In this document: positions 1 to 36,836 of the stretch, piece by piece
Layout of the letters: the number at the start of each line of letters is the position of its first letter
Position numbering within the stretch: the stretch's first letter is position 1
From: Macrostomum lignano
Taxonomy: Eukaryota
Assembly (NCBI GenBank): GCA_002269645.1
Contig: NIVC01002984.1
Location: 1 to 56,842 of the forward strand
Direction: 5' to 3'
Length of the DNA stretch: 56,842 nt
Program-made: the position numbers and the translations under genes
The notes under the pieces: model-generated
What the model saw: the letters and a program-made list of their open reading frames with translations, nothing else
The model's database searches: none
What the model was told of the DNA's origin: nothing

Positions 1-3000
1 TCATGTAAACAATCATCAAGCGTCATTTAAACAATCATAGAAGCGTCATGTAAACAATCATAGAAGTCTGTAAACAATCATAGAAGCGTCATGTAAAAAA
101 ATCATAGAAGCGTCTGCAAACAATCATAGAAGCGTCATGTAAAAATCATAGAAGCGTCTATCTTAAAATCATAGAATCGTCCTGCGCAAATCGGTAGAAG
201 CGTCATGTAAAAAATCATCAAAAGCGTCATGTAAAAAAATCATAAAGACGTCATGTAAAATCATAGTAGCGTCATGTTAAAAAATCATAGTAGGTCATGT
301 AAACAATCATTTAGTAGCGTCATTGTAAAAAATCATAGAAGCGTCATGTAAACAATCATTAGAAGCGTCATGTAAACAATCATAGAAGCGCATGTAAAAT
401 CATAGAAGCGTCATGTAAAAATCTAGAAGCGTCATGTTAAAAATCATAGAGTCTATGCCAAAAATCATAGAAGCGTCATGTAAACAATCATAGAAGCGTC
501 ATGTAAAATCATAAAGCGTCATGATAAAAATCATAGAAGCGTCATGTTAAACAATCATAGAAGCATCATGTAAAAATCATAAGCGTCATGTAAACAATCA
601 TAGAGCGTCATGTAAACAATCTAGAATCGTCATGTAAACAATCTAGAAGCGTCATGTAAACAATCATAGAAGCGCATGTAAACAATCTAGAAGCGTCATG
701 TAAACAATCATAGAAGCGTCATGTAAACAATCATAGAAGCGCCATGTAAAAATCATAAAAGCGTCATGTAAAAATCATAGAAGCGTCATGTAAAACATAG
801 AATCGTCCTGCAAAATCGTAGAAGCGTCATGTAAAAAATCTTGAAGCGTCATGTAAACAATCATAGAAGCGTCATGAAACAATCATAGAAGCGTCATGTA
901 AACAATCCTAGAAGCGTCATGTAAACAATCCTAGAAGCGTCATGTAAACAATCATAGAAGCGTCATGTAAACAATCCTAGAAGCGTCATGTAAACATCTA
1001 GAAGCGTCATGTAAACAATCATAGAAGGCGCCATGTAAAAATCATAAAAGCGTCATGTAAACAATCATTCAAGCGTCATGTAAACAATCATAGAAGCGTC
1101 ATGTAAACAAGCATAGAAGAATGTAAACAATCATAGAAGCGTCATGTAAAAATCATAGAAGCGTCATGAAAACAATCATAGAAGCGTCATGTAGACAATC
1201 ATAGAAGCGTCATGTAAAAATCATAGAAGCGTCATGTAAAAATCATAGAAGCGTCATGTAAACAATCATAGAAGCGTCATGTAAAAATCATAGAAGCGTC
1301 ATGTAAACAATCATAGAAGCGTCATGTAAACAATCTAGAACGTCATGTAAACAATCCTAGAAGCGTCATGTAAACAATCATAGAAGCGCCATGTAAACAA
1401 TCCTAGAAGCGTCATGTAAACAATCATAGAAGCGTCATGTAAACAATCATAGAAGCGCCATGTAAAAATCATAAAAGCGTCATGTAAAAATCATAGAAGC
1501 GTCATGTAAAGACATAGAATCGTCCTGCCAAAATCGTAGAAGCGTCATGTAAAAAATCCTTGAAGCGTCATGTAAACAATCATAGAAGCGTCATGAAACA
1601 ATCATAGAAGCGTCATGTAAACAATCCTAGAAGCTTCATGTAAACAATCCTAGAAGCGTCATGTAAACAATCATAGAAGCGTCATGTAAACAATCCTAGA
1701 AGCGTCATGTAAACAATCATAGAAGCGTCATGTAAACAATCATAGAAGAGTCATGTAAACAATCCTAGAAGCGTCATGTAAACAATCATAGAAGCGTCAT
1801 GTAAACAATCATAGAAGCGCCATGTAAAATCCTTGAAGCGTCATGTAAACAATCATTCAAGCGTCATGTAAACAATCATTCAAGCGTCATTTAAACAATC
1901 ATAGAAGCGTCATGTAAACAAGCATAGAAGAATGTAAACAATCATAGAAGCGTCATGTAAAAATCATAGAAGCGTCGTGAAACAATCATAGAAGCGTCAT
2001 GTAAAAATCATAGAAGCGTCATGTAAAATCATAGAATCGTCCTGAAAATCGTAGAAGCGTCATGTAAAAAATCATAAAGCGTCATGTAAAAAATCATAAA
2101 AGCGTCATGTAAAAATCATAGTAGCGTCATGTAAAAATCATAGTAGCGTCATGTAAAAATCATAGTAGCGTCATGTAAAAAATCATAGAAGCGTCATGTA
2201 AACAATCATAGAAGCGTCATGTAAACAATCATAGAAGCGCCATGTAAAAATCATAAAAGCGTCATGTAAAAATCATAGAAGCGTCATGTAAAATCATAGA
2301 ATCGTCCTGCCAAAATCGTAGAAGCGTCATGTAAACAATCATAGAAGCGTCATGTAAAAATCATAGAAGCGTCATGTAAAAATCATAGAAGCGTCATGTA
2401 AACAATCATAGAAGCGTCATGTAAAAATCATAGAAGCGTCATGTAAACAATCATAGAAGCGTCATGTAAACAATCTAGAATCGTCATGTAAACAATCTAG
2501 AAGCGTCATGTAAACAATCATAGAAGCGCCATGTAAACAATCTAGAAGCGTCATGTAAACAATCATAGAAGCGTCATGTAAACAATCATAGAAGCGCCAT
2601 GTAAAAATCATAAAAGCGTCATGTAAAAATCATAGAAGCGTCATGTAAAGACATAGAATCGTCTGCCAAAATCGTAGAAGCGTCATGTAAAAAATCATGA
2701 AGCGTCATGTAAACAATCATAGAAGCGTCATGAAACAATCATAGAAGCGTCATGTAAACAATCTAGAAGCGTCATGTAAACAATCTAGAAGCGTCATGTA
2801 AACAATCATAGAAGCGTCATGTAAACAATCATAGAAGCGTCATGTAAACAATCCTAGAAGCGTCATGTAAACAATCATAGAAGCGCCATGTAAAAATCAT
2901 AAAAGCGTCATGTAAACAATCATTCAAGCGTCATGTAAACAATCATTCAAGCGTCATTTAAACAATCATAGAAGCGTCATGTAAACAAGCATAGAAGAAT

Positions 3001-6000
3001 GTAAACAATCATAGAAGCGTCATGTAAAAATCATAGAAGCGTCGTGAAACAATCATAGAAGCGTCATGTAAACAATCATAGAAGCGTCATGTAAAAATCA
3101 TAGAAGCGTCATGTAAAAATCATAGAAGCGTCATGTAAACAATCATAGAAGCGTCATGTAAAAATCATAGAAGCGTCATGTAAACAATCATAGAAGCGTC
3201 ATGTAAACAATCCTAGAATCGTCATGTAAACAATCATAGAAGCGTCATGTAAACAATCATAGAAGCGCCATGTAAACAATCCTAGAAGCGTCATGTAAAC
3301 AATCATAGAAGCGTCATGTAAACAATCATAGAAGCGCCATGTAAAAATCATAAAAGCGTCATGTAAAAATCATAGAAGCGTCATGTAAAGACATAGAATC
3401 GTCCTGCAAAATCGTAGAAGCGTCATGTAAAAAATCCTTGAAGCGTCATGTAAACAATCATAGAAGCGTCATGAAACAATCATAGAAGCGTCATGTAAAC
3501 AATCTAGAAGCTTCATGTAAACAATCTAGAAGCGTCATGTAAACAATCATAGAAGCGTCATGTAAACAATCCTAGAAGCGTCATGTAAACAATCATAGAA
3601 GCGTCATGTAAACAATCATAGAAGCGCCATGTAAAAATCCTTGAAGCGTCATGTAAACAATCATTCAAGCGTCATGTAAACAATCATTAGAGCGTCATTT
3701 AAACAATCATAGAAGCGTCATGTAAACAAGCATAGAAGAATGTAAACAATCATAGAAGCGTCATGTAAAAATCATAGAAGCGTCGTGAAACAATCATAGA
3801 AGCGTCATGTAAAAAATCATAGAAGCGTCATGTAAAATCATAGAATCGTCCTGCCAAAATCGTAGAAGCGTCATGTAAAAAATCATCAAAGCGTCATGTA
3901 AAAAAATCATAAAAGCGTCATGTAAAAATCATAGTAGCGTCATGTAAAAATCATAGTAGCGTCATGTAAAAATCATAGTAGCGTCAAGTAAAAAATCATA
4001 GAAGCGTCATGTAAACAATCATAGAAGCGTCATGTAAACAATCATAGAAGCGCCATGTAAAAATCATAAAAGCGTCATGTAAAAATCATAGAAGCGTCAT
4101 GTAAAATCATAGAATCGTCCTGCCAAAATCGTAGAAGCGTCATGTAAACAATCATAGAAGCGTCATGTAAAAATCATAGAAGCGTCATGTAAAAATCATA
4201 GAAGCGTCATGTAAACAATCATAGAAGCGTCATGTAAAAATCATAGAAGCGTCATGTAAACAATCATAGAAGCGTCATGTAAACAATCCTAGAATCGTCA
4301 TGTAAACAATCCTAGAAGCGTCATGTAAACAATCATAGAAGCGCCATGTAAACAATCCTAGAAGCGTCATGTAAACAATCATAGAAGCGTCATGTAAACA
4401 ATCATAGAAGCGCCATGTAAAAATCATAAAAGCGTCATGTAAAAATCATAGAAGCGTCATGTAAAGACATAGAATCGTCCTGCAAAATCGTAGAAGCGTC
4501 ATGTAAAAAATCCTTGAAGCGTCATGTAAACAATCATAGAAGCGTCATGAAACAATCATAGAAGCGTCATGTAAACAATCCTAGAAGCGTCATGTAAACA
4601 ATCCTAGAAGCGTCATGTAAACAATCATAGAAGCGTCATGTAAACAATCATAGAAGCGTCATGTAAACAATCCTAGAAGCGTCATGTAAACAATCATAGA
4701 AGCGCCATGTAAAAATCATAAAAGCGTCATGTAAACAATCATTCAAGCGTCATGTAAACAATCATTCAAGCGTCATTTAAACAATCATAGAAGCGTCATG
4801 TAAACAAGCATAGAAGAATGTAAACAATCATAGAAGCGTCATGTAAAAATCATAGAAGCGTCGTGAAACAATCATAGAAGCGTCATGTAAAAAATCATAG
4901 AAGCGTCATGTAAAATCATAGAATCGTCCTGCCAAAATCGTAGAAGCGTCATGTAAAAAATCATCAAAGCGTCATGTAAAAAATCATAAAAGCGTCATGT
5001 AAAAATCATAGTAGCGTCATGTAAAAATCATAGTAGCGTCATGTAAAAATCATAGTAGCGTCATGTAAAAAATCATAGAAGCGTCATGTAAAAATCGTAG
5101 AAGCGTCATGTAAAAATCATAGAAGCGTTATGTAAAAATGATAGATGCGTCATGTAAACAATCATAGAAGCGTCATGTAAACAATCATAGAAGCGTCATG
5201 TAAAAAATCATAGTAGCGTCATGTAAAAATCATAGTAGCGTCATGTAAAAAATCATAGAAGCGTCATGTAAAAATCGTAGAAGCGTCATGTAAAAATCAT
5301 AGAAGCGTTATGTAAAAATGATAGATGCGTCATGTAAAAAATCATCAAAGCGTCATGTAAAAAATCATAGAAGCGTCATGTAAAAATCATAGAAGCGTCA
5401 TGTAAAAAATCATAGAAGCGTCATGTAAACAATCATAGAAGCGTCATGTAAAAAATCGTAGAAGCGTCATTTAAAAATCATAGAAAGAGTTATTTAAAAA
5501 AATCATAGAAGCGTCATGTAAACAATCATAGAAGCGTCATGTAAAAACCATAGAAGCGTCATGTAAAAATCATAGAAGCGTCATGAAACAATCATAGAAG
5601 CGTCATGTAAACAATCATAGAAGCGTCATATTAACAATCATAGAAGCGTCATGTAAAAATCATAGAAGCGTTATGTAATCAATCATAGAAGCGTCGTGTA
5701 AAAATCATAGAAGCGTCATGTAAAAAATCATAGAAGCGTCATGTAAAAATCATAGAAGCGTCATGTAAAAATCATAGAAGCGTCATGTAAACAATCATAG
5801 AAGCGTCATGTAAAAATCATAGAAGCGTCATGTAAACAATCATAGAAGCGTCATGAAACAATCATAGAAGCGTCATGTAAAAATCATAGAAGCGTCATGT
5901 AAAAATCATAGAAGCGTAATGTAAAAAATCATAGAAGCGTCATGTAAAAATCATAGAAGCGTCATGTAAAATCATAGAATCGTCCTGCCAAAATCGTAGA

Positions 6001-8100
6001 AGCGTCATGTAAAAAATCCTTGAAGCGTCATGTAAAAAATCATAGAAGCGTCATGTAAACAATCATAGAAGCGTCATGTAAACAATCCTAGAATCGTCAT
6101 GTAAACAATCCTAGAAGCGTCATGTAAACAATCATAGAAGCGCCATGTAAACAATCCTAGAAGCGTCATGTAAACAATCATAGAAGCGTCATGTAAACAA
6201 TCATAGAAGCGGCATGTAAAAATCATAAAAGCGTCATGTAAAAATCATAGAAGCGTCATGTAAAATCATAGAATCGTCCTGCCAAAATCGTAGAAGCGTC
6301 ATGTAAACAATCATAGAAGCGTCATGTAAAAATCATAGAAGCGTCATGTAAAAATCATAGAAGCGTCATGTAAAAATCATAGAAGCGTCATGTAAACAAT
6401 CATAGAAGCGTCATGTAAAAATCATAGAAGCGTCATGTAAACAATCATAGAAGCGTCATGTAAACAATCCTAGAATCGTCATGTAAACAATCATAGAAGC
6501 GTCATGTAAACAATCATAGAAGCGCCATGTAAACAATCCTAGAAGCGTCATGTAAACAATCATAGAAGCGTCATGTAAACAATCATAGAAGCGCCATGTA
6601 AAAATCATAAAAGCGTCATGTAAAAATCATAGAAGCGTCATGTAAAGACATAGAATCGTCCTGCCAAAATCGTAGAAGCGTCATGTAAAAAATCCTTGAA
6701 GCGTCATGTAAACAATCATAGAAGCGTCATGAAACAATCATAGAAGCGTCATGTAAACAATCCTAGAAGCGTCATGTAAACAATCCTAGAAGCGTCATGT
6801 AAACAATCATAGAAGCGTCATGTAAACAATCCTAGAAGCGTCATGTAAACAATCATAGAAGCGTCACGTAAACAATCATAGAAGCGCCATGTAAAAATCA
6901 TAAAAGCGTCATGTAAACAATCATTCAAGCGTCATGTAAACAATCATTCAAGCGTCATTTAAACAATCATAGAAGCGTCATGTAAACAAGCATAGAAGAA
7001 TGTAAACAATCATAGAAGCGTCATGTAAAAATCATAGAAGCGTCGTGAAACAATCATAGAAGCGTCATGTAAAAAATCATAGAAGCGTCATGTAAAATCA
7101 TAGAATCGTCTGCCAAAATCGTAGAAGCGTCATGTAAAAAATCATCAAAGCGTCATGTAAAAAATCATAAAAGCGTCATGTAAAAATCATAGTAGCGTCA
7201 TGTAAAAATCATAGTAGCGTCATGTAAAAATCATAGTAGCGTCATGTAAAAAATCATAGAAGCGTCATGTAAAAATCATAGAAGCGTCATGTAAACAATC
7301 ATAGAAGCGTCATGTAAAAATCATAGAAGCGTCATGTAAAAATCATAGAAGCGTCATGAAACAATCATAGAAGCGTCATGTAAACAATCATAGAAGCGTC
7401 ATATAAACAATCATAGAAGCGTCATGTAAAAATCATAGAAGCGTCATGTAAACAATCATAGAAGCGTCGTGTAAAAATCATAGAAGCGTCATGTAAAAAA
7501 TCATAGAAGCGTCATGTAAAAATCATAGAAGCGTTATGTAAAAATCATAGAAGCGTCATGTAAACAATCATAGAAGCGTCATGTAAAAATCATAGAAGCG
7601 TCATGTAAACAATCATAGAAGCGTCATGAAACAATCATAGAAGCGTCATGTAAAAATCATAGAAGCGTCATGTAAAAATCATAGAAGCGTAATGTAAAAA
7701 ATCATAGAAGCGTCATGTAAAAATCATAGAAGCGTCATGTAAAATCATAGAATCGTCCTGCCAAAATCGTAGAAGCGTCATGTAAAAAATCGTAGAAGCG
7801 TCATTTAAAAATCATAGAAAGAGTTATTTAAAAAAATCATAGAAGCGTCATGTAAACAATCAGAGAAGCGTCATGTAAACAATCATAGAAGCGTCATGTA
7901 AAAAATCATAGAAGCGTCATGTAAAAATTATAGAAGCGTCAAGAAAAAATCATAGAAGCGTCATGTAAAAAATCATAGAAGCGTCATGTTAAAATCATAG
8001 AAGCGTCATGAAAAAATCATTGAAGCCTCATTTAAAAACTAAGGAAAGTGTCATTTAAAAAATTAAGAAGCATCATGGTAGAATAAAAGAAGCGTCATGT
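1..8100 (+). repeat. 22-23 bp minisatellite array (consensus ATAGAAGCGTCATGTAAA[C]AATC), ~350 monomers, with higher-order repeats; runs off the left edge
   Basis: Monomer is directly visible throughout. Diagnostic variants (GCATAGAAGAATGT; AATCGTCCTGCCAAAATCG) recur at kb scale. The array decays from ~7900. Confidence 0.98.
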
Positions 8101-9170
8101 CAGACATGAAGGGTGTCATGTAAAAATTAAATGTAGCTATAATGCTGTGCTGGGGAGAAAAACTGAGACGCAAAGGCTCTCAGAGAATAACTGAGATTAC
8201 GGGGGGGGGGTTGCTGAGATGTCAAAGCAAAAGTCAGAAGCTACTTCAAAGTTCATGTACTTTACTCAATTTTTTTATTACATTCTTTGTTGGCTCGCCA
8301 CGGGGGGGGGTCGCTGATAGAAGAAGAGTCATGTAAAAAATAAAAGTAGCACTATGTAATACATAAAAGAAAAGTCATGTCGAAGTTAAAAGATTCATTT
8401 GGGAATTGCTATGATGTCAAAGCTTGGAGGGAGAAGAATTGCTGAGATTCAAGGCTTTAGGTTGGGTTAAAGTTAGGTTTAGGTCAGGTGTGGGTTGAGG
8501 GTTATATTTTATCTGGTTTCAAGGTTAACGGGGGATTTTTCAGATTTCAAGGTTTATGGAGGCCATCGCTGACATGTCAAGGCTTACGGGGGGAATAGCT
8601 GAGATGTCAAGGCTCACGGGGGTATAAATGAGATTTCAAAGCTAAAGTCAGAAGCTACATGTAAACAATCATGTAAAGTTTATTGAAAACTTTTTATTAC
8701 ATTATTTGATGCCTCCTCAGGGGAGGGATTGCTGATAAAAAAAGCGTAATGTAAAAAATAAAAGAAGCTTCATGTCGAAGTTAAGAGATTCATTTGGGAA
8801 TCCCTACGATGTCGAGGCTTGCAGGAAATCGCTATAATGCTGTAGCAGTGCTATAATGACTCTTAGAGAGAATTACTGAAATGTCAATGCTTTAGGGTTA
8901 GGTTAGGGTTAGGTTAGGGTTAGGGTTAGGGTTAGGGTTAGGGTTAGGGTTAGGGTTAGGCTAGGGTTAGGGTTAGAAGGTTGACAGATTTTTTAGATTT
9001 CCAAGGCTTATTGGGGGCATTGCTGAGATGTCAAGGGGGGAGTTGATATGTTAAAGCTTGTGGTGGGGAATTACTGACATGTCAAGGCTTACAAGGTTTG
9101 ACAGGAGATTTTTTAAGATTTCAAGGATACATGTAGCTTATTAAAAAAACGTGTAGCTATTGCATTTCTT
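8100..9170 (+). repeat. Degenerate ~27-30 bp G-rich tandem repeat (GGGGAATTGCTGAGATGTCAAGGCTTA-like), 3' part of Helitron-like element H0
   Basis: Recurrent GCTGAGAT(G/T)TCAAGGC motifs; the same family occupies ~18400-20050; internal duplication ~8225-8420 vs ~8635-8820. Confidence 0.7.
8892..8976 (+). repeat. Interstitial telomeric repeat (TTAGGG)n, ~14 units
   Basis: TTAGGG tandem run with a few TTAGG/CTAGGG variants, flanked on both sides by non-telomeric repeat. Confidence 0.95.
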
Positions 9171-9173
9171 TGG

Positions 9174-9201
9174 CTCCCCAACGGGGGGCGTAGATTGCTA
9201 G
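9174..9201 (+). mobile_element. Helitron-type 3' terminus of element H0 (5' end lies outside the window)
   Basis: CTCCCC-AAC-GGGGGG hairpin, short spacer, CTAG (9198-9201) followed by T; near-identical ends at 25467 and 28607. Confidence 0.78.
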
Positions 9202-9231
9202 TCTAATCTAATATACTAAAAATGGTCTGTT

Positions 9232-9262
9232 TGTGTGTGCGTGTGTGTGTGTGTGTGTGTGT
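9232..9262 (+). repeat. (GT)n microsatellite in the H1 head
   Basis: Visible TG run. Confidence 0.95.
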
Positions 9263-9761
9263 GATCGATTTTAGCAAAAACGGCTGGACCGATTTTCTTC
9301 GAACCTGCACTGTTCGATCAGAAATTATTCCGTGACGGTACATGCATCGTGGCTAAGAAATTGCTCAATGTTAAAGGGATTAAATATTCGAAAAACATGC
9401 TTTTTTGCAAAAGGTCAAGCAGCTCTTTCGACTTGAAATGCATTGTAAGAATGCTAGCAGAAAAACTGACTGGTTGAATTCTGATTCTGAAATAGATTGC
9501 ATCACAATACACTTTATTTATCGTCTGTGTACTGGCTGAATTTGACACTCAATTGAATTGCGTCACAGCTTTGAGTGTGAAAGCATAGCGCAGTACTGAA
9601 TTTATATTACGTAACCATATTGTAAACTTTCATAGACACTGGTACTGACTTGCCTAAGAAATTGATTATGTCATAACTGCTTCGTGAGACTTTTTACTCT
9701 ACCTGACTTGGTGTGAGTGTTGAATTATATAAGTGGTACAACATCACTGATAACTTCGATG

Positions 9762-9820
9762 AGAGCTAGCCTAGAGCTGAACAGACCAGACTGCTAATGC
9801 AGCGACCTAGGTTCGAATCT
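9762..9820 (+). ncRNA. tRNA-derived Pol III cassette (degenerate copy) in the H1 head
   Basis: A-box-like TAGCCTAG, loop CTGCTAA, B-box GGTTCGAATC; T-run at ~9849-9853. Confidence 0.5.
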
Positions 9821-9889
9821 AAGTAGTTTAAAAGTAGTAGTGTAAAAATTTTTATTAAAAGGTTTTATTAAAGGACTAAATAAAAACAC

Positions 9890-18000: not shown

Positions 18001-18097
18001 TTAAACTGCAAGTTGCAAACATTTCAAATGGTTTCGATTATTGAGAAGCATATGGAGATCAGTGGCCATCTGCTCCCAGATTTTGCGGAACAGTGCC

Positions 18098-18286
18098 GGT
18101 GAACCATTGCTAAACTGCTGGTGAAGCATTGCTGAACTGCTGGTGAAGCATTGCTGAACTGCTGATGAACCATTGCTAAACTGCTGGTGAAGCATTGCTA
18201 AACTGCTGGTAAAGTATTGCTAAACTGCTGGTGAAGCATTGCTAAACTGCTGGTGAAGCATTGCTTAAGTTGTGGTGAAATATTGT
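18098..18286 (+). repeat. 22-bp minisatellite (CATTGCTAAACTGCTGGTGAAG), ~8 copies
   Basis: Visible tandem units. Confidence 0.92.
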
Positions 18287-18511
18287 ATTTTTTTAAATAA
18301 ATGCTTCTTTTAAAGAGAAGAAAGCGCAATGCAAGAAAAGGCAAAAAAAAATCACCATGTCAATCATAAAAGAAGCGCACTGTTGAACATAAAAGACTCA
18401 TTGGGAATTTTTAAGACTGCTATGTCTATTGCTACGAGCGTAAGGCTGGTATGGGAAATTGCTGTGATATCAAGACTCATGGGAGAATTTCTAAGATCTC
18501 AAGGCTCAGGG

Positions 18512-18606
18512 GAATTGCTACAATGATGTGATTCTGGGGAGAATTGCTACAATGATGTGATTCTGGGGAGAATTGCTACAATGATGTGATTCTGGGAAGA
18601 ATTGCT
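18512..18606 (+). repeat. 29-bp tandem repeat (GGGGAGAATTGCTACAATGATGTGATTCT), 3 copies, within the G-rich degenerate array (~18400-20050)
   Basis: Three near-identical units. Confidence 0.9.
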
Positions 18607-21040
18607 TTGATTTGAAGGTTTATTTGGGAAATTGCTGAGGTAGCAAGGCTTATTAACAATGCTTTGCGGTCAAGGCTCATGGAGATAATTACTGGAATGC
18701 TGTGGCTGTTGGGGGAATTGCCGACATTGTTAGGGTAAGAGTAAGGCGTAAACCATAAATGAATTGGCCTGTCAAACATAAAAGACTCATCGAGGAATGT
18801 CAAAGCTCATGGGGGGTATCTGAATTATACTGTAGCTCAATGCTCAGGGGGAATTGTTGTGATTGCAACTTAGGATTATTAGGGAAATTTTGTGGCTAAA
18901 AAATGAGTTGCTGAGATATCAAGGCTCATTGGGGAATCGCTGAGATGTCAAAGCTTACGGGGGATCCCTGTAATGCTGTGGGCTGTGACTCTTGGGTATT
19001 GCTGAGATGCCAAGGTTCACAGGGGAATGACTGAGATTTCAAAGGCTCCTAAAGGGAATAGCTGAAATTCAGGAAATGTCAAGGTTCATTGGGTAATTGT
19101 TGAAATGCTGTGGTTCATAGTGGGAAAAGCTGAAATGCTGTGACTTGGCAGGGTTAGGGTTCAATCATAAGACTCGTGTGAAAGTGCCAAGGTATCAAAA
19201 GGTTAGTCCCTCAATTTTCTTGCTCATGGGAAATTGCTAAGATTTCAAAAGCTCATTGGGGAATTTCTGAAATTCTTGGGCTGAGAGGGAGTTGCTGAAA
19301 TGCTGTGACTCGGCTGCAGTTAAGGGTTAGGGTTTCGGTTCAATTATAGAGCGATCGTTGTGTCAATCATAAATGATTCATCAAGGAATTGCTCAGATTA
19401 AAGTATTTGGGGGCGAATTACCTAAATGCTTTGGCTCTTTGATAATTGCTAACAGGTCAAGGCTTTCAGTGAAATTTAAATTTTAAAGCTTATGAGGAAG
19501 TTACTTTAATGCTGAGGCTCAAGGCTCATGAGGGGGAATAGCTAACATGCCGAGACTCACTTATGGGTTAGGGTAAGTGGCTTAGGGTCAGTTTTGGTTC
19601 AATCATAGATTAACCGCTGTCAACCATCAATTAAAGAGCTGCTAAGATGAGAATTGCTATATTGCTTGATATCGTAGGATATCAAGGCTTATGTGCGGAA
19701 TCGCTGAGTTGACAAGGACCATGAAGAAATTGCTGAGATATCAAGGCTCATAAAGGGATTGCTGAATTCTTGAAGGAGGGGAGTTGGGTTGGTGGGATGT
19801 CAAAACTTACTGGGCTGGGAGAATTGCGTAGATGTCAAGGCTCGAGTTTAATTGCTGCGATGTCGATCTTAATGAGGGATTTTCTGAAATTTCAAGGCTT
19901 ACTGAGGGAATTATTTAGATTTCAAGGCTTACTGGGGGATTGCTAAGATGTCAAGGCTTACTGGGCGAATTGCTGAGATATCAAGGCTCATAAGGGGTGT
20001 CTGAATTATTGGGGGGAGGGGGTTAGGTTGTTGAGCGATTGTCAGATCGTCAAGTAGAACGGCTCAAGTAGCTCATTTAATTCAGATAATGAGTGATGCA
20101 AAAACACAAGTGATGCTGCTTTTTGCTAATAGGAAATATCAGCGTTTTTATTAAAGGCTTGGTTTTCCGAGTTAGGCTAATAAAGAGGGGTCTAAGGCCG
20201 TCAGGGATTTACACATTGAGCTCCTGCTGCGGACCAGAATATGCCCAGGCCAATGACGATATGCACTAAGAGTTTGTGCTTGAAAGGATAGGCATTATTC
20301 GCTGATTGAGAAAGGGTTTTAGGCTGATGTCGGAAACTTTTTTGGCTGGTGAAAGTTTTGATTCATGGCAATTTATCTTTGCCAAAAATAAAAAAAGTAA
20401 TTATTGATGAATGGAAATCAACATTTTGGATAATTAGTAAGGTTAAGATCTTAGAGATTTAGTATATTGTGATATACTCTTGGGCCAAAATAAAAACCAC
20501 TTTCATTTTAAATGCTGGGGGTGTCATTTTTAAGGCCCCCCAGCGGGGGGCTAAATGGCTAGTCCTATATACTAAAAATGAGTTGTCTGTATGTGGGTAT
20601 GAGGGTATGCGATAGATTTCAGAAAAATTGGCTCAACCAATTTTCTTCAAACATGCACCATTCGATCAAAAATTTTCCTGGGACGGTACATGCATCTTGG
20701 CTAAGAAATTGCTCAATGTTAAAGGGATTAAATATTCGAAAAACATGCTTTTTTGCAAAGGTCAAGCAGCTCTTTCGACCTGAAATGCATTGTAAGAATG
20801 CTAGAGAAAAATGACTGACTGAATTTCAATTCTGATAAAGATTGCATCACAACAAGTTGAAAACAGTGCCGAAGAAATGCACACACGACTTGATTAAAAT
20901 TGCGTAACCAATATTGCTAACTTGAACTGAGACTGATACTGGCTGACTGAGAAATTGATTATGTCATAACTTTTTACTCCAATTGACTTGCTGTAAGAAT
21001 TGAATTATAAGGGCCACAATTCATGTTCTCCAATTGAAAA

Positions 21041-21098
21041 GAGATAGCCAAGATGCGAACAGACTGGACTGCTAATGTAGCGACCTAGGTTCGAATCT
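21041..21098 (+). ncRNA. tRNA-derived Pol III cassette in the H3 head
   Basis: TAGCCAAG A-box-like; CTGGA-CTGCTAA-TGTAG anticodon-like arm; 4-nt variable loop; CTAGG-TTCGAAT-CTTAG T-arm; T8 run at 21116-21123. No acceptor stem. Confidence 0.6.
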
Positions 21099-21149
21099 TA
21101 GTAGTGCAAAAAAGATTTTTTTTATTAAAACACCTAAAAAACACAAAAC

Positions 21150-24100
21150 TACTAAACATAAAAGAAGCGCAATGTGAAACATAGAAGAGCCACCATGTCG
21201 AACATTAAAGAGCCAACATGTCAAACATAAAAGAGCCACCATGTCAAACCTAAACGAGCCACCATGTCTAATATTTAAGAGGCACCATGTAAAACATATA
21301 AGTGACTTTATGTCAAACATAAAAGAGCCACCATTTCGAACATTAAACAGCCACCATTTCGAACATTAAAGAGCCACCATGTCGACCATAAAAGAGCCAC
21401 TATTTCGAACATCAAAGAGCCACTATGTCAAACATTTAGGAGCCACTTTTTCGAACATTAAAGAGCCACCATGTCAAACATAAAAGAGCCAACATGTCAA
21501 ACATAAGAGAGCCAACATGTCAAACATAAAGAGCCACCATGTCAAACATATATGTGACTTTGTGTCAAACATTAAAGAGCCACCATTTCGAACATTAAAG
21601 AGCCACTATTTCGAACATTAAAGAGCCACCATGTCAAACATGAAAGAGCTACCATTTCAAACATTAAAGAGCCACCATGTCAAACATTCAAAAGCCACAT
21701 TGTCAAACATTAAAGAGCCATTATGTCGTACATTAAAGAGCCACCATTTCGAACATTAAAGAGCCACCATGTCGAACATAAAAGAGCCACTATTTTGAAC
21801 ATTAAAAAGCCACCATTTCGAACATTAAAGAGCCACCATTTCGAACATAAAAGAGCCACCATGTCAAACATAAAGAGCCACCATTTTGAATATTAAAGAG
21901 CCACTATGTCAAACATTTAGGAGCCACTTTGTCGAACATTAAAGAGCCACCATGTCAAACATAAAAGAGCCAACATGTCAAACATAAGAGAGCCAACATG
22001 TCAAACATAAAGAGCCACCATGTCAAACATATATGTGACTTTGTGTCAAACATTAAAGAGCCACCATTTCGAACATTAAAGAGCCACTATTTCGAACATT
22101 AAAGAGCCACCATGTCAAACATGAAAGAGCTACCATTTCAAACATTAAAGAGCCACCATGTCAAACATTCAAAAGCCACATTGTCAAACATTAAAGAGCC
22201 ATTATGTCGTACATTAAAGAGCCACCATTTCGAACATTAAAGAGCCACCATGTCGAACATAAAAGAGCCACTATTTTGAACATTAAAAAGCCACCATTTC
22301 GAACATTAAAGAGCCACTATTTCGAACATAAAAGAGCCACCATGTCAAACATGAAAGAGCTACCATTTCAAACATTAAAGAGCCACCATGTCAAACATTC
22401 AAAAGCCACATTGTCAAACATTAAAGAGCCATTATGTCGTACATTAAAGAGCCACCATTTCGAACATTAAAGAGCCACCATGTCGAACATAAAAGAGCCA
22501 CTATTTTGAACATTAAAAAGCCACCATTTCGAACATTAAAGAGCCACCATTTCGAACATAAAAGAGCCACCATGTCAAACATAAAGAGCCACCATTTTGA
22601 ATATTAAAGAGCCACTATGTCAAACATTTAGGAGCCACTTTGTCGAACATTAAAGAGCCACCATGTCAAACATAAAAGAGCCAACATGTCAAACATAAGA
22701 GAGCCAACATGTCAAACATAAAGAGCCACCATGTCAAACATATATGTGACTTTGTGTCAAACATTAAAGAGCCACCATTTCGAACATTAAAGAGCCACTA
22801 TTTCGAACATTAAAGAGCCACCATGTCAAACATGAAAGAGCTACCATTTCAAACATTAAAGAGCCACCATGTCAAACATTCAAAAGCCACATTGTCAAAC
22901 ATTAAAGAGCCATTATGTCGTACATTAAAGAGCCACCATTTCGAACATTAAAGAGCCACCATGTCGAACATAAAAGAGCCACTATTTTGAACATTAAAAA
23001 GCCACCATTTCGAACATTAAAGAGCCACCATTTCGAACATAAAAGAGCCACCATGTCAAACATGAAAGAGCTACCATTTCAAACATTAAAGAGCCACCAT
23101 GTCAAACATTCAAAAGCCACATTGTCAAACATTAAAGAGCCATTATGTCGTACATTAAAGAGCCACCATTTCGAACATTAAAGAGCCACCATGTCGAACA
23201 TAAAAGAGCCACTATTTTGAACATTAAAAAGCCACCATTTCGAACATTAAAGAGCCACCATTTCGAACATAAAAGAGCCACCATGTCAAACATAAAGAGC
23301 CACCATTTTGAATATTAAAGAGCCACTATGTCAAACATTTAGGAGCCACTTTGTCGAACATTAAAGAGCCACCATGTCAAACATAAAAGAGCCAACATGT
23401 CAGACATTAAAAAAGCCACCGTACAGATATAAAAGAGTTACCATGTAGAACAAAAAAGAGCCACCATTTCGAACAAAAAAGAGCCACCATGTCAAACATA
23501 AAAGAGCCACCATGTCAAACATAAAAGAGCCAACATGTCAAACATAAAGAGCCACCATATCAAAAATTTAGGAGCCACCATGTCAAACATATATGTGACT
23601 TTATGTCAAACATTAAAGAGCCACAATTTCGAACATAACAGAGCTACGATGTCAAACATTAAAGAGCCACCATGTCGAACATTAAAGAGCCACCATGTCA
23701 AACATTAAAGAGCCACCCTGTTGAATATCAAAGAGCCACCATGTCGAACATTAAAGAGCCACCATGTCTAACATTAAAAGTCACCATGTTAAACATTAAA
23801 GAGCCACCATATCAAGCATAAAAGAGCCACCATGTCAAACCTAAAAGAGCCACCATGTCGAAAATTTAAGAGCCAAAATGTAGAATATAAAAGAGCCACC
23901 ATGTCAACCATATAAGTGACTTTATGTCAAATATTTAAGAGCCACCATGTTAAACCTAAAAGAGCCCCCATTTTAAACCTAAAAGAGCCACCATGTTAAA
24001 CCTAAAAGAGCCACCATGTCGAACACTTAAGAGCCACAATGTAAAATATTTAAGAGCCACCATTTCGAACATATAAGTGACTTTATGTCAAACATTAAAG

Positions 24101-24790
24101 AGCCACCATGTCGAACATTAAAGAGCCACCATGTAAAACAAAAGAGCCACCATTTCGAACATTAAAGAGCCACCATGTCTAACATTAAAAGTCACCATGT
24201 TAAACATTAAAGAGCCACCATATCAAGCATAAAAGAGCCACCATGTCAAACCTAAAAGAGCCACCATGTCGAAAATTTAAGAGCCAAAATGTAGAATATA
24301 AAAGAGCCACCATGTCAACCATATAAGTGACTTTATGTCAAATATTTAAGAGCCACCATGTTAAACCTAAAAGAGCCACCATGTCAAACATAGAAATGCC
24401 ACCAAGTAAAATATAAAAGAGCTACCATGTCAAACATAAAATAGCCATCATGTCAAACATAAAAGAGTCATCATGTGAAACATATACGTGACTCAATGTC
24501 AAACATTAAAGAGCCACCATGTCAAACATAAATGAGACACCATATGACGAACATTAAAGAGCCACCATGTCAAACATTAAAGAGCCACCATGTCAAACAT
24601 TAAAGAGCCACCATTTTAAACAATAAAGAGCCACCATGTCGAACATTAAAGAGCCACCATGTCAAACATTAGAGAGCCACCATGTCAAACATAAAAGAGC
24701 CACCATGTCAAACATAAAAGAGCCACCATGTCGAACATAAAAGAGCCACCATGTCAAGCATAAAAGAGCCACCATGTTGAACATAAAATT
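21150..24790 (+). repeat. 23-bp minisatellite (ATTAAAGAGCCACCATGTCAAAC), ~158 monomers, 481+230=711 bp higher-order repeat
   Basis: Unit visible; marker ATTATGTCGTAC at 21720, 22201, 22431, 22912, 23142. Confidence 0.98.
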
Positions 24791-24877
24791 TACACAATTT
24801 CAAACGTGAAAGTAAGCGAATTTTAAAGGAGCCACTATAATGCTAAGGAAATTGTCGCACTAGCTACTTATTGTCTG

Positions 24878-25330
24878 GTGGATGCTTGCTATTTGGGGAT
24901 GCTTGCTATCTGAGGGATGCTTTCTATCTGGGGGATGCTTGCTATCTGGGGGATGCTTGCTATCTTGGGGATGCTTGCTATCTAGGGGATGCTTGCTATC
25001 TGGGGGATGCTTGCTATCTGGGGGATGCTTGCTATCTGGGGATGCTTGCTATCTGGGGATGCTTGCTATCTGAGGGATGCTTGCTATCTGGGGGATGCTT
25101 GCTATCTGGGGGATGCTTGCTATCTGGGGGATGCTTGCTATCTGAGGGATGCTTGCTATCTGAGAGATGCTTGCTATCTGGGGGATGCTTGCTATCTGGG
25201 GGATGGTTGCTATCTAGGGGATGCTTGCTATCTGGGGGATGCTTGCTATCTGGGGGATGCTTGCTATCCGGGGGTTGCTTGCAATCTGGAGGATGCTTGC
25301 TATCTGGGGAATGCTTGCTGTCTTGGGATG
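24878..25330 (+). repeat. 18-bp G-rich minisatellite (GGGGGATGCTTGCTATCT), ~25 copies
   Basis: Unit visible; gives GDACYL periodic ORFs. Confidence 0.97.
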
Positions 25331-25852
25331 ATTTCTTTTTGCATTGCACTTCCTTTGAGTATTTTGTCTGTTTTCTTTGTGAAGGCTTTTTTTGGCTATC
25401 TTTTTGTTACTTGTAGAGAACAGAGGTTCTATACAGACGTCCCCCAACGGGGGGCGAAGATTGCTAGTCCTATATACTAAAAATGAGTTGTCTGTATGTG
25501 GGTATGTGGGTATGCGATAGATTTCAGAAAAATTGGCTCAACCGATTTTCTTCAAACTTGCACCATTCGATCAAGCAAAATTTTCGACTTGAAATGCATT
25601 GTAAGAATGCTAGAGAAAAACCTGACTGACTGAATTTCAATTCTGATAAAGATTGCATCACAACAAGTTGAAAACAGTGTCGAAGAAATGCACACACGAC
25701 TTGATTTAAATTGCGTAACCAATATTGCTAACTTGAACTGAGACTGATACTGGCTGACTGAGAAATTGATTATGTCATAACTTTTTACTCTAACTGACTT
25801 GCTATAAGAATTAAATTATAAGGGCAACAGTTCATGTTCTCCAATTGAAAAT

Positions 25853-25909
25853 AGATAGCCTAGATGCGAACAGACTGGACTGCTAATGTAGCGACCTAGG
25901 TTCGAATCT
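25853..25909 (+). ncRNA. tRNA-derived Pol III cassette in the H4 head
   Basis: Nearly identical to the 21041-21098 copy; T-run at 25926-25932. Confidence 0.6.
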
Positions 25910-25959
25910 TAGTAGTGCAAAATAATTTTTTTATCAAAACACCCTAAAACACAAAAAGC

Positions 25960-28225
25960 TAAACATAAAGGAAGCGCAATGTCAAACATTAAAGAGCCAA
26001 CCATCTAAAACATTAAAGAGCCACCATGTCAAACATATACATGACTCAATGTCAAACATATGCGTGACTCAATGTCAGACTTTAAAGAGCCACCATGTCG
26101 AACATTAAAGAGCCACCATGTCGAACATTAAAGAGCCTCCATGTCAAACAGATACATGACTCCATGTCAAACATATACATGACTCCATGTCAAACATTAA
26201 AGAGCCACCATGTCAAGCATTAAAGAGCCACCATGTCAAACATTAAAGAGCCACCATGTCGAACATTAGAGAGCCGCCATGTCAAACATATACATGACTC
26301 CATGTCAGACATTCAAGAGCCACCATGTCGAACATTAAAGAGCCACTATGTCGAACTTTAAAGAGCCACTATGTCAAACATTAAAGAATCACAATGTAAA
26401 ACATTAATGAGCCGGCATGTCAAACATCAAAGAGCCACCATGTCAAACATCAAAGAGCCACCATGTCAAACATATACATGACTCCATGTCGAACATTAAA
26501 GGGCCACCATGTCAAACATTAAAGAGCCACCATGTCAAACATAAAAGAGCTATCATGTCAAACATTAAAGAGCCATCATGTCAAACATAAAAGAGCCACC
26601 ATGTCAAACATAAAAGAGCCACCATGCCAAACATTAAAGAGCCACCATGTCAAACATATACGTGACTCAAACATGAAAAACCTGATGACAAACGTGGCGA
26701 ACATTAAAGAGCCACCATGTCGAACATAAAAGAGCCACCATGTCAAAAATTAAAGAGCCGCAATGTCAAACATTGAAGAGAAATCATGTCTAACATTAAA
26801 GAGCCACCATGTCTAACATTAGAGAGCCACCATGTCTAACATTAAAGAGCCACCATGTCAAGCATAAAAGAGCCACCATGTCGAACATAAAAGAACCACC
26901 ATGTCGAACAAAAAGAGCCACCATGTCCAACATATATGTGACTCCATGTCAAACATAAAAGAGCTACCATGAAGAACATTAAAGAGCCACCACGTAAAAC
27001 ATTAAAGAGCCATCATGTCGAACATTAAAGAGCCACCATGTCTAACATTAAAGAGCCACCATGTCGAACATTAAAGAGCCACCATGTCGAACATTAAAGA
27101 GCCGCCATGTCAAACATATACATGACTCCATGTCGAACATTAAAGGGCCACCATGTCAAACATTAAAGAGCCACCATGTCAAACATAAAAGAGCTATCAT
27201 GTCAAACATTAAAGAGCCATCATGTCAAACATAAAAAAGCCACCATGTCAAACATAAAAGAGCCACCATGCCAAACATTAAAGAGCCACCATGTCAAACA
27301 TATACGTGACTCAAACATGAAAAACCTGATGACAAACGTGGCGAACATTAAAGAGCCACCATGTCGAACATAAAAGAGCCACCATGTAAAACATATAGGT
27401 GACTCCATGTCAAATTTTAAAGAGCCACCATGTCAAACATTCAAGAGCCACCATGTCTAACATTAAAGAGCCACCATGTCAAGCATAAAAGAGCCACCAT
27501 GTCGAACATAAAAGAACCACCATGTCGAACATTAAAGAACCACCATGTCAAACATTAAAGAGCCACCATATCGAACATTAAAGAGCCACCAAGTCAAACA
27601 TTAAAAAGCTACCATGTCAAACATTCAAGAGGCATCATGTCAAACAGTAAAGAGCCACCAAGTCAAACATAAAAGAGCTACCATGTCAAACATAAAAGAG
27701 CCACCATGTCAAACATTCAAGAGCCACCATATCAAACATTCAAGAAACACCATGTCAAACATTAAAGAGCCACCATGTCGAACATAAAAGAGCCACCATG
27801 CCAAACATAAAGTAGCCACCTTGTCGAACATTAAAGAGCCACCATATCGAACATTAAAGAGCCACCGAGTCAAACATAAAAGAGCTACCATGTCAAACAA
27901 TAAAGACCTACCATGTCAAACATTAAAGAGCCACCATGTCAAACATAAAAGAGCCACCATGTCAAACATATATGTGACTCCATGTCAAACAGTTAAGAGC
28001 CACCATGTCAAACATAAAAGAGCCACCATGTCAAACATATATGTGACTCCATGTCAAACAGTAAAGAGCCACCATGTCAAGCATAAAAGAGCCACCATGT
28101 CGAACATAAAAGAACCACCATGTCAAACATAAAAGAGCCACTATGTCAAACAATAAACAGACACCATGTCAGACAATAAAAAAACCCGAATCAAACATTA
28201 AAGAGCCACCATGTCAAACATAAAA
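25960..28225 (+). repeat. 23-bp minisatellite, same family as in H3, ~98 monomers, 644-bp (28-mer) duplication
   Basis: Unique insert ACATGAAAAACCTGATGACAAACGTGGCG at ~26671 and ~27315. Confidence 0.97.
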
Positions 28226-28321
28226 TTTACAAAATTTCAAACGTAAAAGTAAGCGTCATACTAATTTTAAAGGAGCCACTATAGAGCTAAGGAAATTGTA
28301 GCACTAGCTACTTATTGTATG

Positions 28322-28470
28322 GTGGATGCTTACTATTTGGGGATGCTTGCTATCTGGGGGATGCTTGCCATCTGGGGGATGTTTGCAATCTGGGGGATGC
28401 TTGCTATCTGGGGGATGCTTGCAATCTGGGGGATGCTTGCTATCTGGGGGATGCTTGCTGTCTTGGGATG
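28322..28470 (+). repeat. 18-bp G-rich minisatellite, ~8 copies
   Basis: Same unit as 24878-25330. Confidence 0.95.
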
Positions 28471-28637
28471 ATTTCTTTTTGCATTACACTTTATTTGAGC
28501 AGTTTGTCTGTCGTCTTTGTGAAGGCTTTATTTGGCTGTCTTTTTGTTACTTGTAGAGAACAGAGATTCTATCCAGATGTCCCCCAACGGGGGGCGAAGA
28601 TTGCTAGTGTCTAACTATAACTTTGTTATATTCTAGG

Positions 28638-36748: not shown

Positions 36749-36836
<88 letters not shown>
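36749..36836 (+). repeat. (AG)44 microsatellite inside the solo LTR
   Basis: Visible perfect run. Confidence 0.99.

What the first reader, a model, noticed from the sequence alone, without database searches (positions are those of the whole stretch)
1..28607. One Helitron-like chassis carrying interchangeable minisatellite cargo
Seen: the apparently independent satellites all lie inside units with a shared architecture: TC...TATACTAAA head, tRNA-like cassette (H1, H3, H4), array A, G-rich array B, hairpin plus CTAG. Array A is 24 bp in H1, 23 bp in H3/H4 and 22-23 bp in H0 (head outside the window); H2 has only short arrays. Known: Helitrons/Helentrons with central tandem repeats are described in Drosophila (DINE-1 type) and oysters. 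Inference: here one head family ships several different satellites of 2-8 kb, so a rolling-circle element could be the vehicle that generates, swaps and disperses this genome's minisatellites.
Basis: partly seen in the sequence, partly recalled or inferred. Interest (0 to 1): 0.85.

Follow-up and report, generated by a model that had tools for sequence, protein, structure and literature searches.

The report
Helitron-like transposons packed with minisatellite arrays
The first half of this animal genome window is a head-to-tail cluster of protein-less rolling-circle (Helitron-type) transposon copies whose interiors have swollen into kilobase arrays of 18-30 bp repeats; the structure is real, but the kind is already described in oysters, flies, frogs and ciliates.

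Summary
Positions 1-28607 contain six plus-strand units. There are five 5' ends (TC...ATATACTAAA) and five 3' ends (G/C hairpin, about 10 nt, CTAG). Three junctions read exactly ...CTAG|TC.... A roughly 600-bp head is shared by H1, H3 and H4 (73-93% identity).

- The "tRNA-like cassette" is not a tRNA by ARAGORN or Rfam. It is at most a decayed relic.
- "H2" has two heads. Its main part shares only about 50 nt of head, and it alone has a 19-nt Helentron-type subterminal inverted repeat.
- The H0, H2, H3 and H4 arrays are one diverged 22-23-bp family. Only H1's 24-mer differs, and it resembles the motif at the A/B boundary.
- The arrays are not colinear between copies, so they expanded in place rather than being swapped in.
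- A 150-bp piece of the 23-mer also sits inside an unrelated TIR element at 33472-33622.

Best reading: non-autonomous Helitron-like elements with canonical Helitron ends and a DINE-1/HINE-like interior. No RepHel gene is in the window, and no outside copy could be found, so mobility and a genome-wide role are untested. The concept is already published (oyster Cg_HINE, DINE-1, Xenopus Heli2Xen, Paramecium). Verdict: new member of a known kind, of modest interest.

The parts
1..8100 (+). H0 array A: about 361 copies of a 22/23-bp monomer (ATGTAAA(C)AATCATAGAAGCGTC). The head lies outside the window.
8101..9201 (+). H0 tail complex: three headless [A-like monomers, then 29-30-bp G-rich B repeats, then hairpin] sub-units (8215-8430 resembles 8629-8825). 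It includes (TTAGGG)14 at 8892-8976. The true 3' end has a hairpin at 9173-9189 and CTAG at 9198-9201.
9202..9892 (+). H1 head: TCTAATCTAATATACTAAA terminus, (TG)18 microsatellite at 9228-9263, conserved core, decayed tRNA-like relic at about 9760-9830 followed by a T-run.
9893..13011 (+). H1 array A: about 126 copies of a 24-bp monomer (GATTATTGCACTTGATAAACCAAG), with a 430-bp higher-order duplication. It grades into transitional 23/24-mers at 12901-13011.
13025..13381 (+). H1 array B: degenerate 18-bp G-rich repeats (GGATGCTTGCTATCTGGG).
13382..13602 (+). H1 tail: hairpin at 13567-13585. The 3' end is CTAG at 13589-13592 or the mutated CTTTAG at 13597-13602. The next base after 13602 is T.
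15189..16338 (+). H2a: head (TCTAATCTAAATATACTAAA), (TTTG)8 at 15218-15250, and the shared head core at 15357-15602. It has no tail of its own.
16339..20562 (+). H2b: head TCCAAATATACTAAATCTCTAAG, short arrays only (22-mer at 18094-18279, A-like remnants at 18290-18400, 29-30-mers at 18451-19988 mixed with TTAGGG-like runs). A 3' subterminal inverted repeat at 20450-20468 is complementary to the 5' end (19/19). Hairpin at 20534-20552, CTAG at 20559-20562.
20563..21153 (+). H3 head: TCCTATATACTAAAAATG terminus, GT-rich microsatellite, core, tRNA-like relic at about 21045-21110 followed by a T-run.
21154..24817 (+). H3 array A: about 160 copies of a 23-bp monomer (ATGTCAAACATWAAAGAGCCACC family), with internal 481/711-bp duplications.
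24874..25327 (+). H3 array B: 25 copies of the 18-bp TCTGGGGGATGCTTGCTA.
25328..25467 (+). H3 tail: hairpin at 25438-25456, then 11 nt ending in CTAG at 25464-25467. It abuts the H4 head directly.
25468..25978 (+). H4 head: 93% identical to the H3 head, with an ~85-bp internal deletion.
25979..28225 (+). H4 array A: about 98 copies of the 23-bp monomer. Same family as H3 but not colinear with it.
28320..28467 (+). H4 array B: 8 copies of the 18-bp repeat.
28468..28607 (+). H4 tail: hairpin and CTAG at 28604-28607. Similarity to H3 stops here. The flanking base at 28608 is T, followed by unrelated DNA.
33472..33622 (-). Off-cluster piece (about 6 monomers) of the H3/H4 23-mer satellite, 85-88% identical. 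It has no Helitron head or tail and sits inside a TIR-bounded element (33001-34230) whose paralogue at 35365-35535 lacks it.

Best explanation
Positions 1-28607 are a cluster of non-autonomous rolling-circle (Helitron-like) transposon copies, all in the same orientation.

Each copy keeps the cis signals a RepHel transposase would need. These are a left terminal sequence starting with TC (TC..ATATACTAAA) and a right terminal sequence made of a short G/C hairpin followed about 10 nt later by CTAG. That these act as nick and termination sites is inferred from the Helraiser work, not shown here.

The interior is organised like DINE-1/HINE elements:
- a GT-rich microsatellite directly after the 5' end;
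- a roughly 600-bp core;
- then two zones of short tandem repeats, an A-rich 'A' zone (22-24 bp) and a G-rich 'B' zone (18 or 29-30 bp, sometimes mixed with TTAGGG).

The repeat zones are resident parts of the element family. In individual copies or subfamilies they have diverged and been blown up to 2-8 kb, most likely by slippage and unequal exchange (inferred). This happened largely after the copies separated.

The exact CTAG|TC joints between neighbouring, partly different, copies can arise in three known ways (all inferred):
- insertion of a new copy into the A|T site that every canonical Helitron creates at its own 5' border;
- read-through of a 3' terminator;
- for the H3-H4 pair, integration of a multimer from a circular intermediate.

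The transposase must come from an autonomous partner elsewhere in the genome. None is present in the window.
For: - End motifs are far above chance and sit at the similarity boundaries.
- Hairpins of 5-8 G/C pairs end 10-12 nt before the CTAG in four of the five tails; H1's spacing is ambiguous.
- Three junctions read ...CTAG|TC... with no intervening base. This is the same junction as in Helraiser circles (PMC4778049).
- H4 ends exactly at CTAG, followed by T and unrelated DNA.
- The H0-H1 and H2-H4 blocks are separated by 1.6 kb of unique DNA.
- The last 26 nt of the tail are 25/26 identical between H0 and H3/H4, while the rest of those tails does not align.
- The head is shared by H1, H3 and H4, and its core by H2a.
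- Every head carries a 5' microsatellite.
- H2 has a 19-21-nt 5'/3' subterminal inverted repeat.
- H0, H2, H3 and H4 monomers are homologous.
- H1's 24-mer grades into transitional repeats at its own A/B boundary, and that boundary region aligns with H3 and H4.
- The arrays are not colinear and carry private segmental duplications.
- No TSD, poly(A) or terminal inverted repeat was seen at any boundary on reading the junctions.
Against: - All copies lie in one cluster and one orientation. No second locus, empty site or autonomous RepHel element could be examined (searches were all empty; two searches found no Helitron domains).
- Of the two 5' junctions not preceded by a tail, H2a is preceded by C (an A lies one base further) and H2b by A.
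- H2a has no tail.
- The 3' end of H1 is ambiguous (CTAG at 13592 or CTTTAG at 13602).
- Only H2 shows the Helentron-type inverted repeat, so placement in Helitron1 versus Helitron2/Helentron is unresolved.
- The homology of the H0 and H3 monomers rests on short consensus sequences (17/23 identity, shuffle p about 0.01).
Confidence: 0.7

Rival explanations
1. The satellites are interchangeable cargo that the element captures and swaps. The family would be the main generator and disperser of this genome's minisatellites.
For: - One head family carries a 24-mer array in H1 and a 23-mer array in H3/H4.
- The same 26-nt 3' end is combined with different interiors in H0 and H3/H4.
- The 23-mer also appears in another mobile element at 33472-33622, showing that it can move between contexts.
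- Modular LTS-satellite-RTS combinations are reported in oyster and Paramecium Helitrons (PMC7492417, PMC13085455).
Against: - Four of the five A arrays are one monomer family.
- The fifth array is related to H1's own boundary repeats, in a region shared with H3 and H4.
- The arrays are not colinear between sister copies and grew by private duplications.
- There is no evidence of dispersal: no copy in the other 28 kb and none in the searched collections.
- The one off-cluster array has no Helitron ends.
Confidence: 0.2
2. This is a purely local product. One ancient Helitron-derived unit was multiplied at this locus by segmental or tandem duplication and unequal crossing-over, as in a macrosatellite. 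The CTAG|TC joints would then simply be inherited, and none of these copies ever transposed independently.
For: - All six units are on the same strand and contiguous apart from one 1.6-kb spacer.
- H3 and H4 are 91-93% identical neighbours.
- The H0 tail shows local duplication of whole [A-B-hairpin] modules.
- There are no dispersed copies in the window.
Against: - Neighbouring units belong to clearly different subfamilies. H0 and H1 differ in tails and arrays, and H2b differs from H3 in its head beyond the first ~50 nt and in its tail. Yet they still meet exactly at CTAG|TC.
- The termini are much better conserved than adjacent sequence (25/26 nt against unalignable), as expected for selected cis sites.
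- A unique 1.6-kb spacer with its own ORF separates the two blocks.
Confidence: 0.15
3. The units are tRNA-derived SINE-like retroposons, or TIR-type MITEs, that happen to contain minisatellites.
For: - The head contains a B-box-like GGTTCGAATC, an anticodon-loop-like CTGCTAA and a downstream T-run.
- H2 has a 19-nt inverted repeat.
Against: - No tRNA is called by ARAGORN, or by Rfam even at E<=10.
- The relic lies about 480-560 nt inside the element, not at its 5' end.
- There is no poly(A) or A-rich 3' end and no TSD.
- The inverted repeat is subterminal, present in one unit only, and followed by the hairpin-CTAG tail. That is the Helentron/HINE pattern, not a MITE pattern.
Confidence: 0.03

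Closest known systems
Cg_HINE, non-autonomous Helentrons of the Pacific oyster (Vojvoda Zeljko et al. 2020, PMC7492417)
   Same: - Protein-less Helitron-superfamily elements built as left flank with microsatellite, central tandem repeats in a fixed orientation, then right flank with a palindrome.
- One or two consecutive arrays per element.
- Their 'group 2' elements have similar flanks but unrelated repeats.
- No TSD.
   Different: - Oyster monomers are 138-181 bp in arrays of about 2-5 copies. Here monomers are 18-30 bp in arrays of up to 8 kb.
- Cg_HINE elements all have 11-12-bp subTIRs and prefer TT sites. Here only H2 has a subTIR, and the ends are TC...hairpin-CTAG.
- Sequence relatedness could not be tested, because their consensus table is illegible in the held supplement.
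DINE-1 / HINE elements of Drosophila and other arthropods (Thomas et al. 2014, PMC4067079)
   Same: - A 5' subTIR starting 2-4 nt from the end, a microsatellite, a core, central repeats, and a 3' stem-loop 8-35 bp from the end.
- Tandem repeats can fill about half of the element.
- H2b fits this plan, although its 3' subTIR lies 94 nt from the end rather than 38-60.
   Different: - H1, H3 and H4 lack subTIRs.
- The termini are the canonical Helitron1 TC/CTAG.
- Insertion into TT is not seen.
Canonical (Helitron1/HLE1) non-autonomous Helitrons, e.g. the bat Helibat/Helraiser family (PMC4778049; definitions in PMC4067079 and PMC11417382)
   Same: - 5' TC and 3' CTAG.
- A palindrome about 11 nt from the 3' end.
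- A 3' flanking T and no TSD.
- The CTAG|TC head-to-tail joint is identical to the Helraiser circle junction.
   Different: - Canonical Helitrons are not typically built around a 5' microsatellite plus two resident minisatellite zones.
- No RepHel partner is known here.
Heli2Xen / Helitron-N2_XT (Xenopus), Helitron-N1_DR (zebrafish), and Paramecium Helitron 'types' defined by LTS-satellite-RTS combinations (PMC12001565, PMC13085455)
   Same: - Helitron families made largely of minisatellite arrays.
- Different satellites combined with given terminal sequences.
- Association with telomeric repeats in Paramecium.
   Different: - Xenopus monomers are 166 bp, and the autonomous copy is known.
- Paramecium elements insert in telomeric repeats at chromosome ends, whereas here TTAGGG runs lie inside the element.
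- No sequence relationship was tested.

Membership tests
Canonical Helitron (Helitron1/HLE1), non-autonomous | 5' end begins with TC | tested here: met
   All five heads begin with TC at the point where similarity starts. Three of them directly follow the preceding CTAG.
Canonical Helitron (Helitron1/HLE1), non-autonomous | 3' end is CTRR | tested here: met
   CTAG is present at 9201, 20562, 25467 and 28607. H1 has CTAG at 13592 or a mutated CTTTAG at 13602.
Canonical Helitron (Helitron1/HLE1), non-autonomous | 16-20-nt palindrome about 11 bp from the 3' end | tested here: met
   G/C stems of 5-8 bp with 3-4-nt loops end 10-12 nt before the terminus in T0, T2, T3 and T4. In T1 the distance is 7 or 17 nt.
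Canonical Helitron (Helitron1/HLE1), non-autonomous | Insertion between A and T, without target-site duplication | tested here: inconclusive
   - The 3' neighbour is T at all five tails if H1 ends at 13602; it is A if H1 ends at 13592.
- The 5' neighbour is A for H2b but C for H2a, with an A one base further.
- No TSD is visible.
- No empty site is available for comparison.
Canonical Helitron (Helitron1/HLE1), non-autonomous | An autonomous RepHel element sharing the termini exists in the genome | not testable with these tools
   No Helitron_like_N or PIF1 domain, or any other Pfam hit, was found in the 13 of the window's longer ORFs scanned, most of at least 100 aa. The source genome was not found in any collection.
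Canonical Helitron (Helitron1/HLE1), non-autonomous | Multiple dispersed copies with different flanks (evidence of transposition) | not testable with these tools
   In the window all copies form one cluster, and there is none in 28608-56842. The two blocks do have different flanks and a unique spacer.
Helentron-derived HINE / DINE-1-like (Helitron2/HLE2) | 5' subterminal repeat complementary to a 3' subterminal repeat upstream of the palindrome | tested here: not met
   Present only in H2: 16341-16359 pairs with 20450-20468 (19/19), and the H2a head pairs 20/21. It is absent in H1-T1, H3-T3 and H4-T4, where shuffle p ranges from 0.06 to 0.97.
Helentron-derived HINE / DINE-1-like (Helitron2/HLE2) | Microsatellite after the 5' end, and central tandem repeats in a fixed orientation | tested here: met
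   The heads carry (TG)18, (TTTG)8 or GT-rich tracts directly after the terminus. The A and B arrays are in the same orientation in every unit.
Helentron-derived HINE / DINE-1-like (Helitron2/HLE2) | Insertion between T and T | tested here: not met
   The external 5' neighbours are C and A, not T. The 3' neighbours are T. Only two informative 5' junctions exist.
tRNA-derived SINE | tRNA-related Pol III promoter region at the 5' end, an A-rich or simple-repeat 3' tail, and flanking TSD | tested here: not met
   - No tRNA is detected.
- The relic lies about 480-560 nt inside the element.
- The 3' end is hairpin-CTAG.
- No TSD is present.

The most novel reading that the evidence does not exclude
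This could be a lineage that bridges Helitron1 and Helentron/HINE. It has TC...hairpin-CTAG ends and a DINE-like microsatellite and repeat interior, and some members still carry subterminal inverted repeats. Under this reading its left and right terminal modules recombine freely with resident repeat zones. By head-to-tail concatenation (circle multimers, or homing to its own 5' A|T site) it would seed most of this genome's kilobase minisatellites, including interstitial TTAGGG tracts.
Probability: 0.12. Interest if true: 0.6.

Novelty: new member of a known kind. Interest (0 to 1): 0.3.

Why it matters
If a genome-wide survey confirmed it, this family would add a short-monomer, kilobase-array example to the growing evidence that rolling-circle transposons seed and spread tandem repeats. 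Existing examples come from oysters, Drosophila, Xenopus and Paramecium.

Its mix of canonical Helitron ends with a DINE-1-like interior, plus one member that keeps a subterminal inverted repeat, could also inform how Helitron1 and Helentron-type elements relate.

Practically, recognising these units explains about half of this window as one repeat family. It also warns annotators that the 'independent' minisatellites here are parts of one repeat family: the copies of the shared head and tail match at 73-93%, but the arrays themselves are poorly alignable. As it stands, it is a well-formed instance of a published phenomenon, not a new principle.

Tried and rejected
- tRNA identity of the 'cassette'. 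ARAGORN at default and relaxed thresholds, Rfam at gathering score, and Rfam at E<=10 on 20560-21160 and 15900-17900 gave no tRNA. The only hit was a weak match (E=4) to a bacterial sRNA model over the T-arm-like part. Rejected as a tRNA and kept only as a possible decayed relic.
- Finding the source genome or other copies. All of the following found nothing: exact-protein look-ups for three window ORFs; two metagenome scans, one with the conserved head core and one with the 26-nt 3' end; one viral-contig scan; and a full-text search for six diagnostic strings.
- Identifying the organism. The GPCR ORF had no homologue. The 636-aa transposase-like ORF has only 42-50% relatives in diverse metazoans. 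The organism stays unidentified beyond 'metazoan with TTAGGG repeats'.
- RepHel or other domains in the window. Pfam scans of 13 ORFs gave only a rhodopsin-type GPCR hit and a weak DUF4218 hit.
- Helentron-type subterminal inverted repeats in H1, H3 and H4. None above shuffles.
- Colinearity of the H3 and H4 arrays, which would show the array was copied with the element. Not found.
- Direct comparison with oyster Cg_HINE flank consensus. The relevant supplementary table is illegible in the held text.

Full report
WHAT IS THERE

The window comes from an animal genome. It has TTAGGG runs, a rhodopsin-type GPCR ORF, and a DUF4218-type transposase-like ORF whose relatives are all metazoan. The organism could not be identified further.

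Positions 1-28607 are dominated by tandem arrays:
- a 22/23-bp array at 1-8100;
- a 24-bp array at 9893-12912;
- 23-bp arrays at 21154-24817 and 25979-28225;
- G-rich 18-bp arrays at 13126-13296, 24874-25327 and 28320-28467;
- 29-30-bp G-rich repeats at 8547-8643, 18451-18606 and 19699-19988.

Autocorrelation and monomer counting confirm these periods. The four long A arrays alone make up 17.0 kb, about 60% of the region.

THE SHARED FRAME

- ATATACTAAA occurs six times against 0.22 expected. Five of these are on the plus strand, a few bases after a TC that starts a head (9202, 15189, 16339, 20563, 25468).
- CCCC-N3-5-GGGG followed within 22 nt by CTAG gives nine overlapping matches against 0.02 expected. 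They mark five tails ending at 9201, 13592, 20562, 25467 and 28607.
- The last 19 nt and the first 18 nt recur only at these places.
- The tails fold into 5-8-bp G/C hairpins. In four of them the hairpin ends 10-12 nt before the terminus; in H1 the spacing is ambiguous.
- At 9201/9202, 20562/20563 and 25467/25468 a tail meets the next head as ...CTAG|TC... with nothing between.
- After 28607 the similarity to the sister copy stops. A T and unrelated DNA follow.
- The roughly 600-bp head of H3 aligns with H1 (73-83%) and H4 (93%, with an ~85-bp deletion). Its core also aligns with 15357-15602.

CORRECTIONS TO THE DESCRIPTION

1. The 'tRNA-like cassette' is not a tRNA.
   - ARAGORN finds nothing there, even at relaxed thresholds.
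   - Rfam finds no tRNA at gathering score or at E<=10.
   - What exists is a B-box-like GGTTCGAATC with a 4-5-bp T-stem, an anticodon-loop-like CTGCTAA whose stem is not kept in H1, and a downstream T-run.
   - This could be a decayed captured tRNA or SINE fragment, but that is inference only.

2. 'H2' is two things.
   - H2a (15189-16338) has a head plus the shared core but no tail.
   - H2b (16339-20562) shares only about 50 nt of head with the others and has its own interior.
   - Both H2 heads are complementary (20/21 and 19/19) to 20448-20468, about 65 nt upstream of the H2 hairpin.
   - That is the subterminal inverted repeat typical of Helentron/HINE/DINE-1 elements.
   - H1, H3 and H4 have nothing comparable.

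3. Every head carries a microsatellite straight after the terminus: (TG)18, (TTTG)8 or GT-rich tracts. This is another DINE-1/HINE and oyster Cg_HINE trait.

4. The H0 tail (8101-9201) consists of three headless [A monomers, B repeats, hairpin] modules. The first two have degenerate ends, CTGATAG and CTGATAA. One module contains (TTAGGG)14.

ARE THE SATELLITES INTERCHANGEABLE CARGO?

The monomer consensus sequences were compared in all rotations against shuffles.
- H3 and H4 share one 23-mer (20/23).
- H0's 22/23-mer aligns with them at 17/23 (p about 0.01).
- Remnant monomers in H2 and in the H0 tail are intermediate.
- Only H1's 24-mer falls outside this family. It grades into 'transitional' repeats at 12901-13011.
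- Just downstream of those, H1's A-to-B boundary region (...GCACTAGCTACTT...GTGGATGCTTGCT...) aligns with the same boundary in H3 and H4.
- The B arrays fall into an 18-bp form (H1, H3, H4) and a 29-30-bp form (H0, H2).

So there are two A families and two B families, all traceable to positions inside a common plan.

H3 and H4 are sister copies, yet their arrays are not colinear. H4 segments mostly match the last 250 bp of H3's array. H3 has private 481/711-bp duplications and H1 has a 430-bp one.

The simplest reading is that short resident repeat zones diverge and expand in place. Foreign satellites being swapped in and out is a less economical explanation.

One finding cuts the other way. 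A 150-bp piece of the H3/H4 23-mer (85-88% identity, minus strand) lies at 33472-33622. It sits inside an unrelated element with 45-50-bp terminal inverted repeats, and the paralogous interior at 35365-35535 lacks it. The satellite can therefore occur without Helitron ends.

WHAT IT MOST LIKELY IS AND HOW IT WORKS

The ends meet the published definition of canonical Helitrons: 5' TC, 3' CTRR, a palindrome about 11 bp from the end, and no TSD.

The genomic CTAG|TC joints are the same as the precise head-to-tail junction of Helraiser circles. In that system the hairpin acts as a termination signal, and its bypass causes read-through.

I therefore read the units as non-autonomous rolling-circle elements mobilised in trans by a RepHel protein encoded elsewhere (inferred).

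Two facts argue that the ends are selected cis sites and that at least some units arrived independently:
- The last 26 nt are 25/26 identical between H0 and H3/H4, while the remaining tail is unalignable.
- Neighbours of different subfamilies still meet exactly at CTAG|TC.

Such joints can arise in three ways:
- A new copy inserts into the A|T formed by the flanking A and the first T of a resident element.
- A 3' terminator is read through.
- For H3-H4, a circle-derived multimer is integrated.

None of these can be distinguished here.

LIMITS

- No RepHel or other Helitron domain is present in the window.
- The other 28 kb contain no head or tail.
- No related DNA or identical protein was found in the metagenome, viral or assembly collections.
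- Transposition, empty sites, copy number and the share of the genome's minisatellites carried by this family remain untested.
- A purely local origin by segmental duplication is not excluded, though the subfamily differences and the unique 1.6-kb spacer (13603-15188) speak against it.
- Insertion-site preference is inconclusive. The 3' neighbour is T at every tail if H1 ends at 13602. The two informative 5' neighbours are C and A.

COMPARISON WITH KNOWN SYSTEMS AND NOVELTY

Helitron-superfamily elements built mostly of tandem repeats, with modular combinations of flanks and repeats, are already described in several systems:
- oyster Cg_HINE, including a group with similar flanks but unrelated repeats;
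- DINE-1/HINE;
- Xenopus Heli2Xen and zebrafish Helitron-N1_DR;
- Paramecium, where LTS-satellite-RTS combinations define types.

The present family differs in detail:
- it has canonical TC/CTAG ends together with a DINE-like interior;
- its monomers are very short (18-30 bp) and its arrays very long;
- it has internal TTAGGG tracts;
- it forms an exact head-to-tail cluster.

I file it as a new member of a known kind with modest interest.

Noticed in passing
window 8892-8976; also 8455-8510, 19150-19170, 19320-19345, 19565-19590, 33195-33215: There is an interstitial telomere-type array, (TTAGGG)14, inside the H0 tail. Degenerate TTAGGG/TTAGG runs are interleaved with the G-rich B repeats of H0 and H2. 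One more short run lies in the TIR element at about 33.2 kb.
   Followed up: partly
window 33001-34230: A ~1.2-kb non-coding element is bounded by 45-50-bp terminal inverted repeats (43/45 identical). It contains a 150-bp minus-strand piece of the H3/H4 23-mer satellite. A paralogous interior at 35365-35806 lacks the satellite.
   Followed up: partly
window 38596-46127: Inverted repeats of about 110 bp (83% identical) flank an intact 636-aa ORF (40014-41924). The ORF has a weak DUF4218 hit and 42-50% identical homologues in many metazoans (Macrostomum, Lingula, insects, fish). This is probably a TIR DNA transposon with its transposase.
   Followed up: partly
window 31769-32761 (+): An intron-less 330-aa rhodopsin-family GPCR ORF (7tm_1, E=4e-10) has no homologue at E<=1e-5 in the 5.8-billion-protein collection.
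   Followed up: partly
window 14524-15075 (-): A 183-aa ORF lies in the unique spacer between H1 and H2a. It is rich in E, Q, R and L, looks coiled-coil-like, and has no Pfam hit.
   Followed up: no
window 21154-28225: Most H3/H4 23-mers contain GCCACCATG, a perfect Kozak-like context. This is probably coincidental.
   Followed up: no
window 36749-36836; 54000-56000; 50142-50268 vs 50604-50736: There is a perfect (AG)44 microsatellite, a G+C-rich stretch (0.57-0.64) at the right end of the window, and a further ~130-bp inverted-repeat pair (82% identical) that may mark another small TIR element.
   Followed up: no
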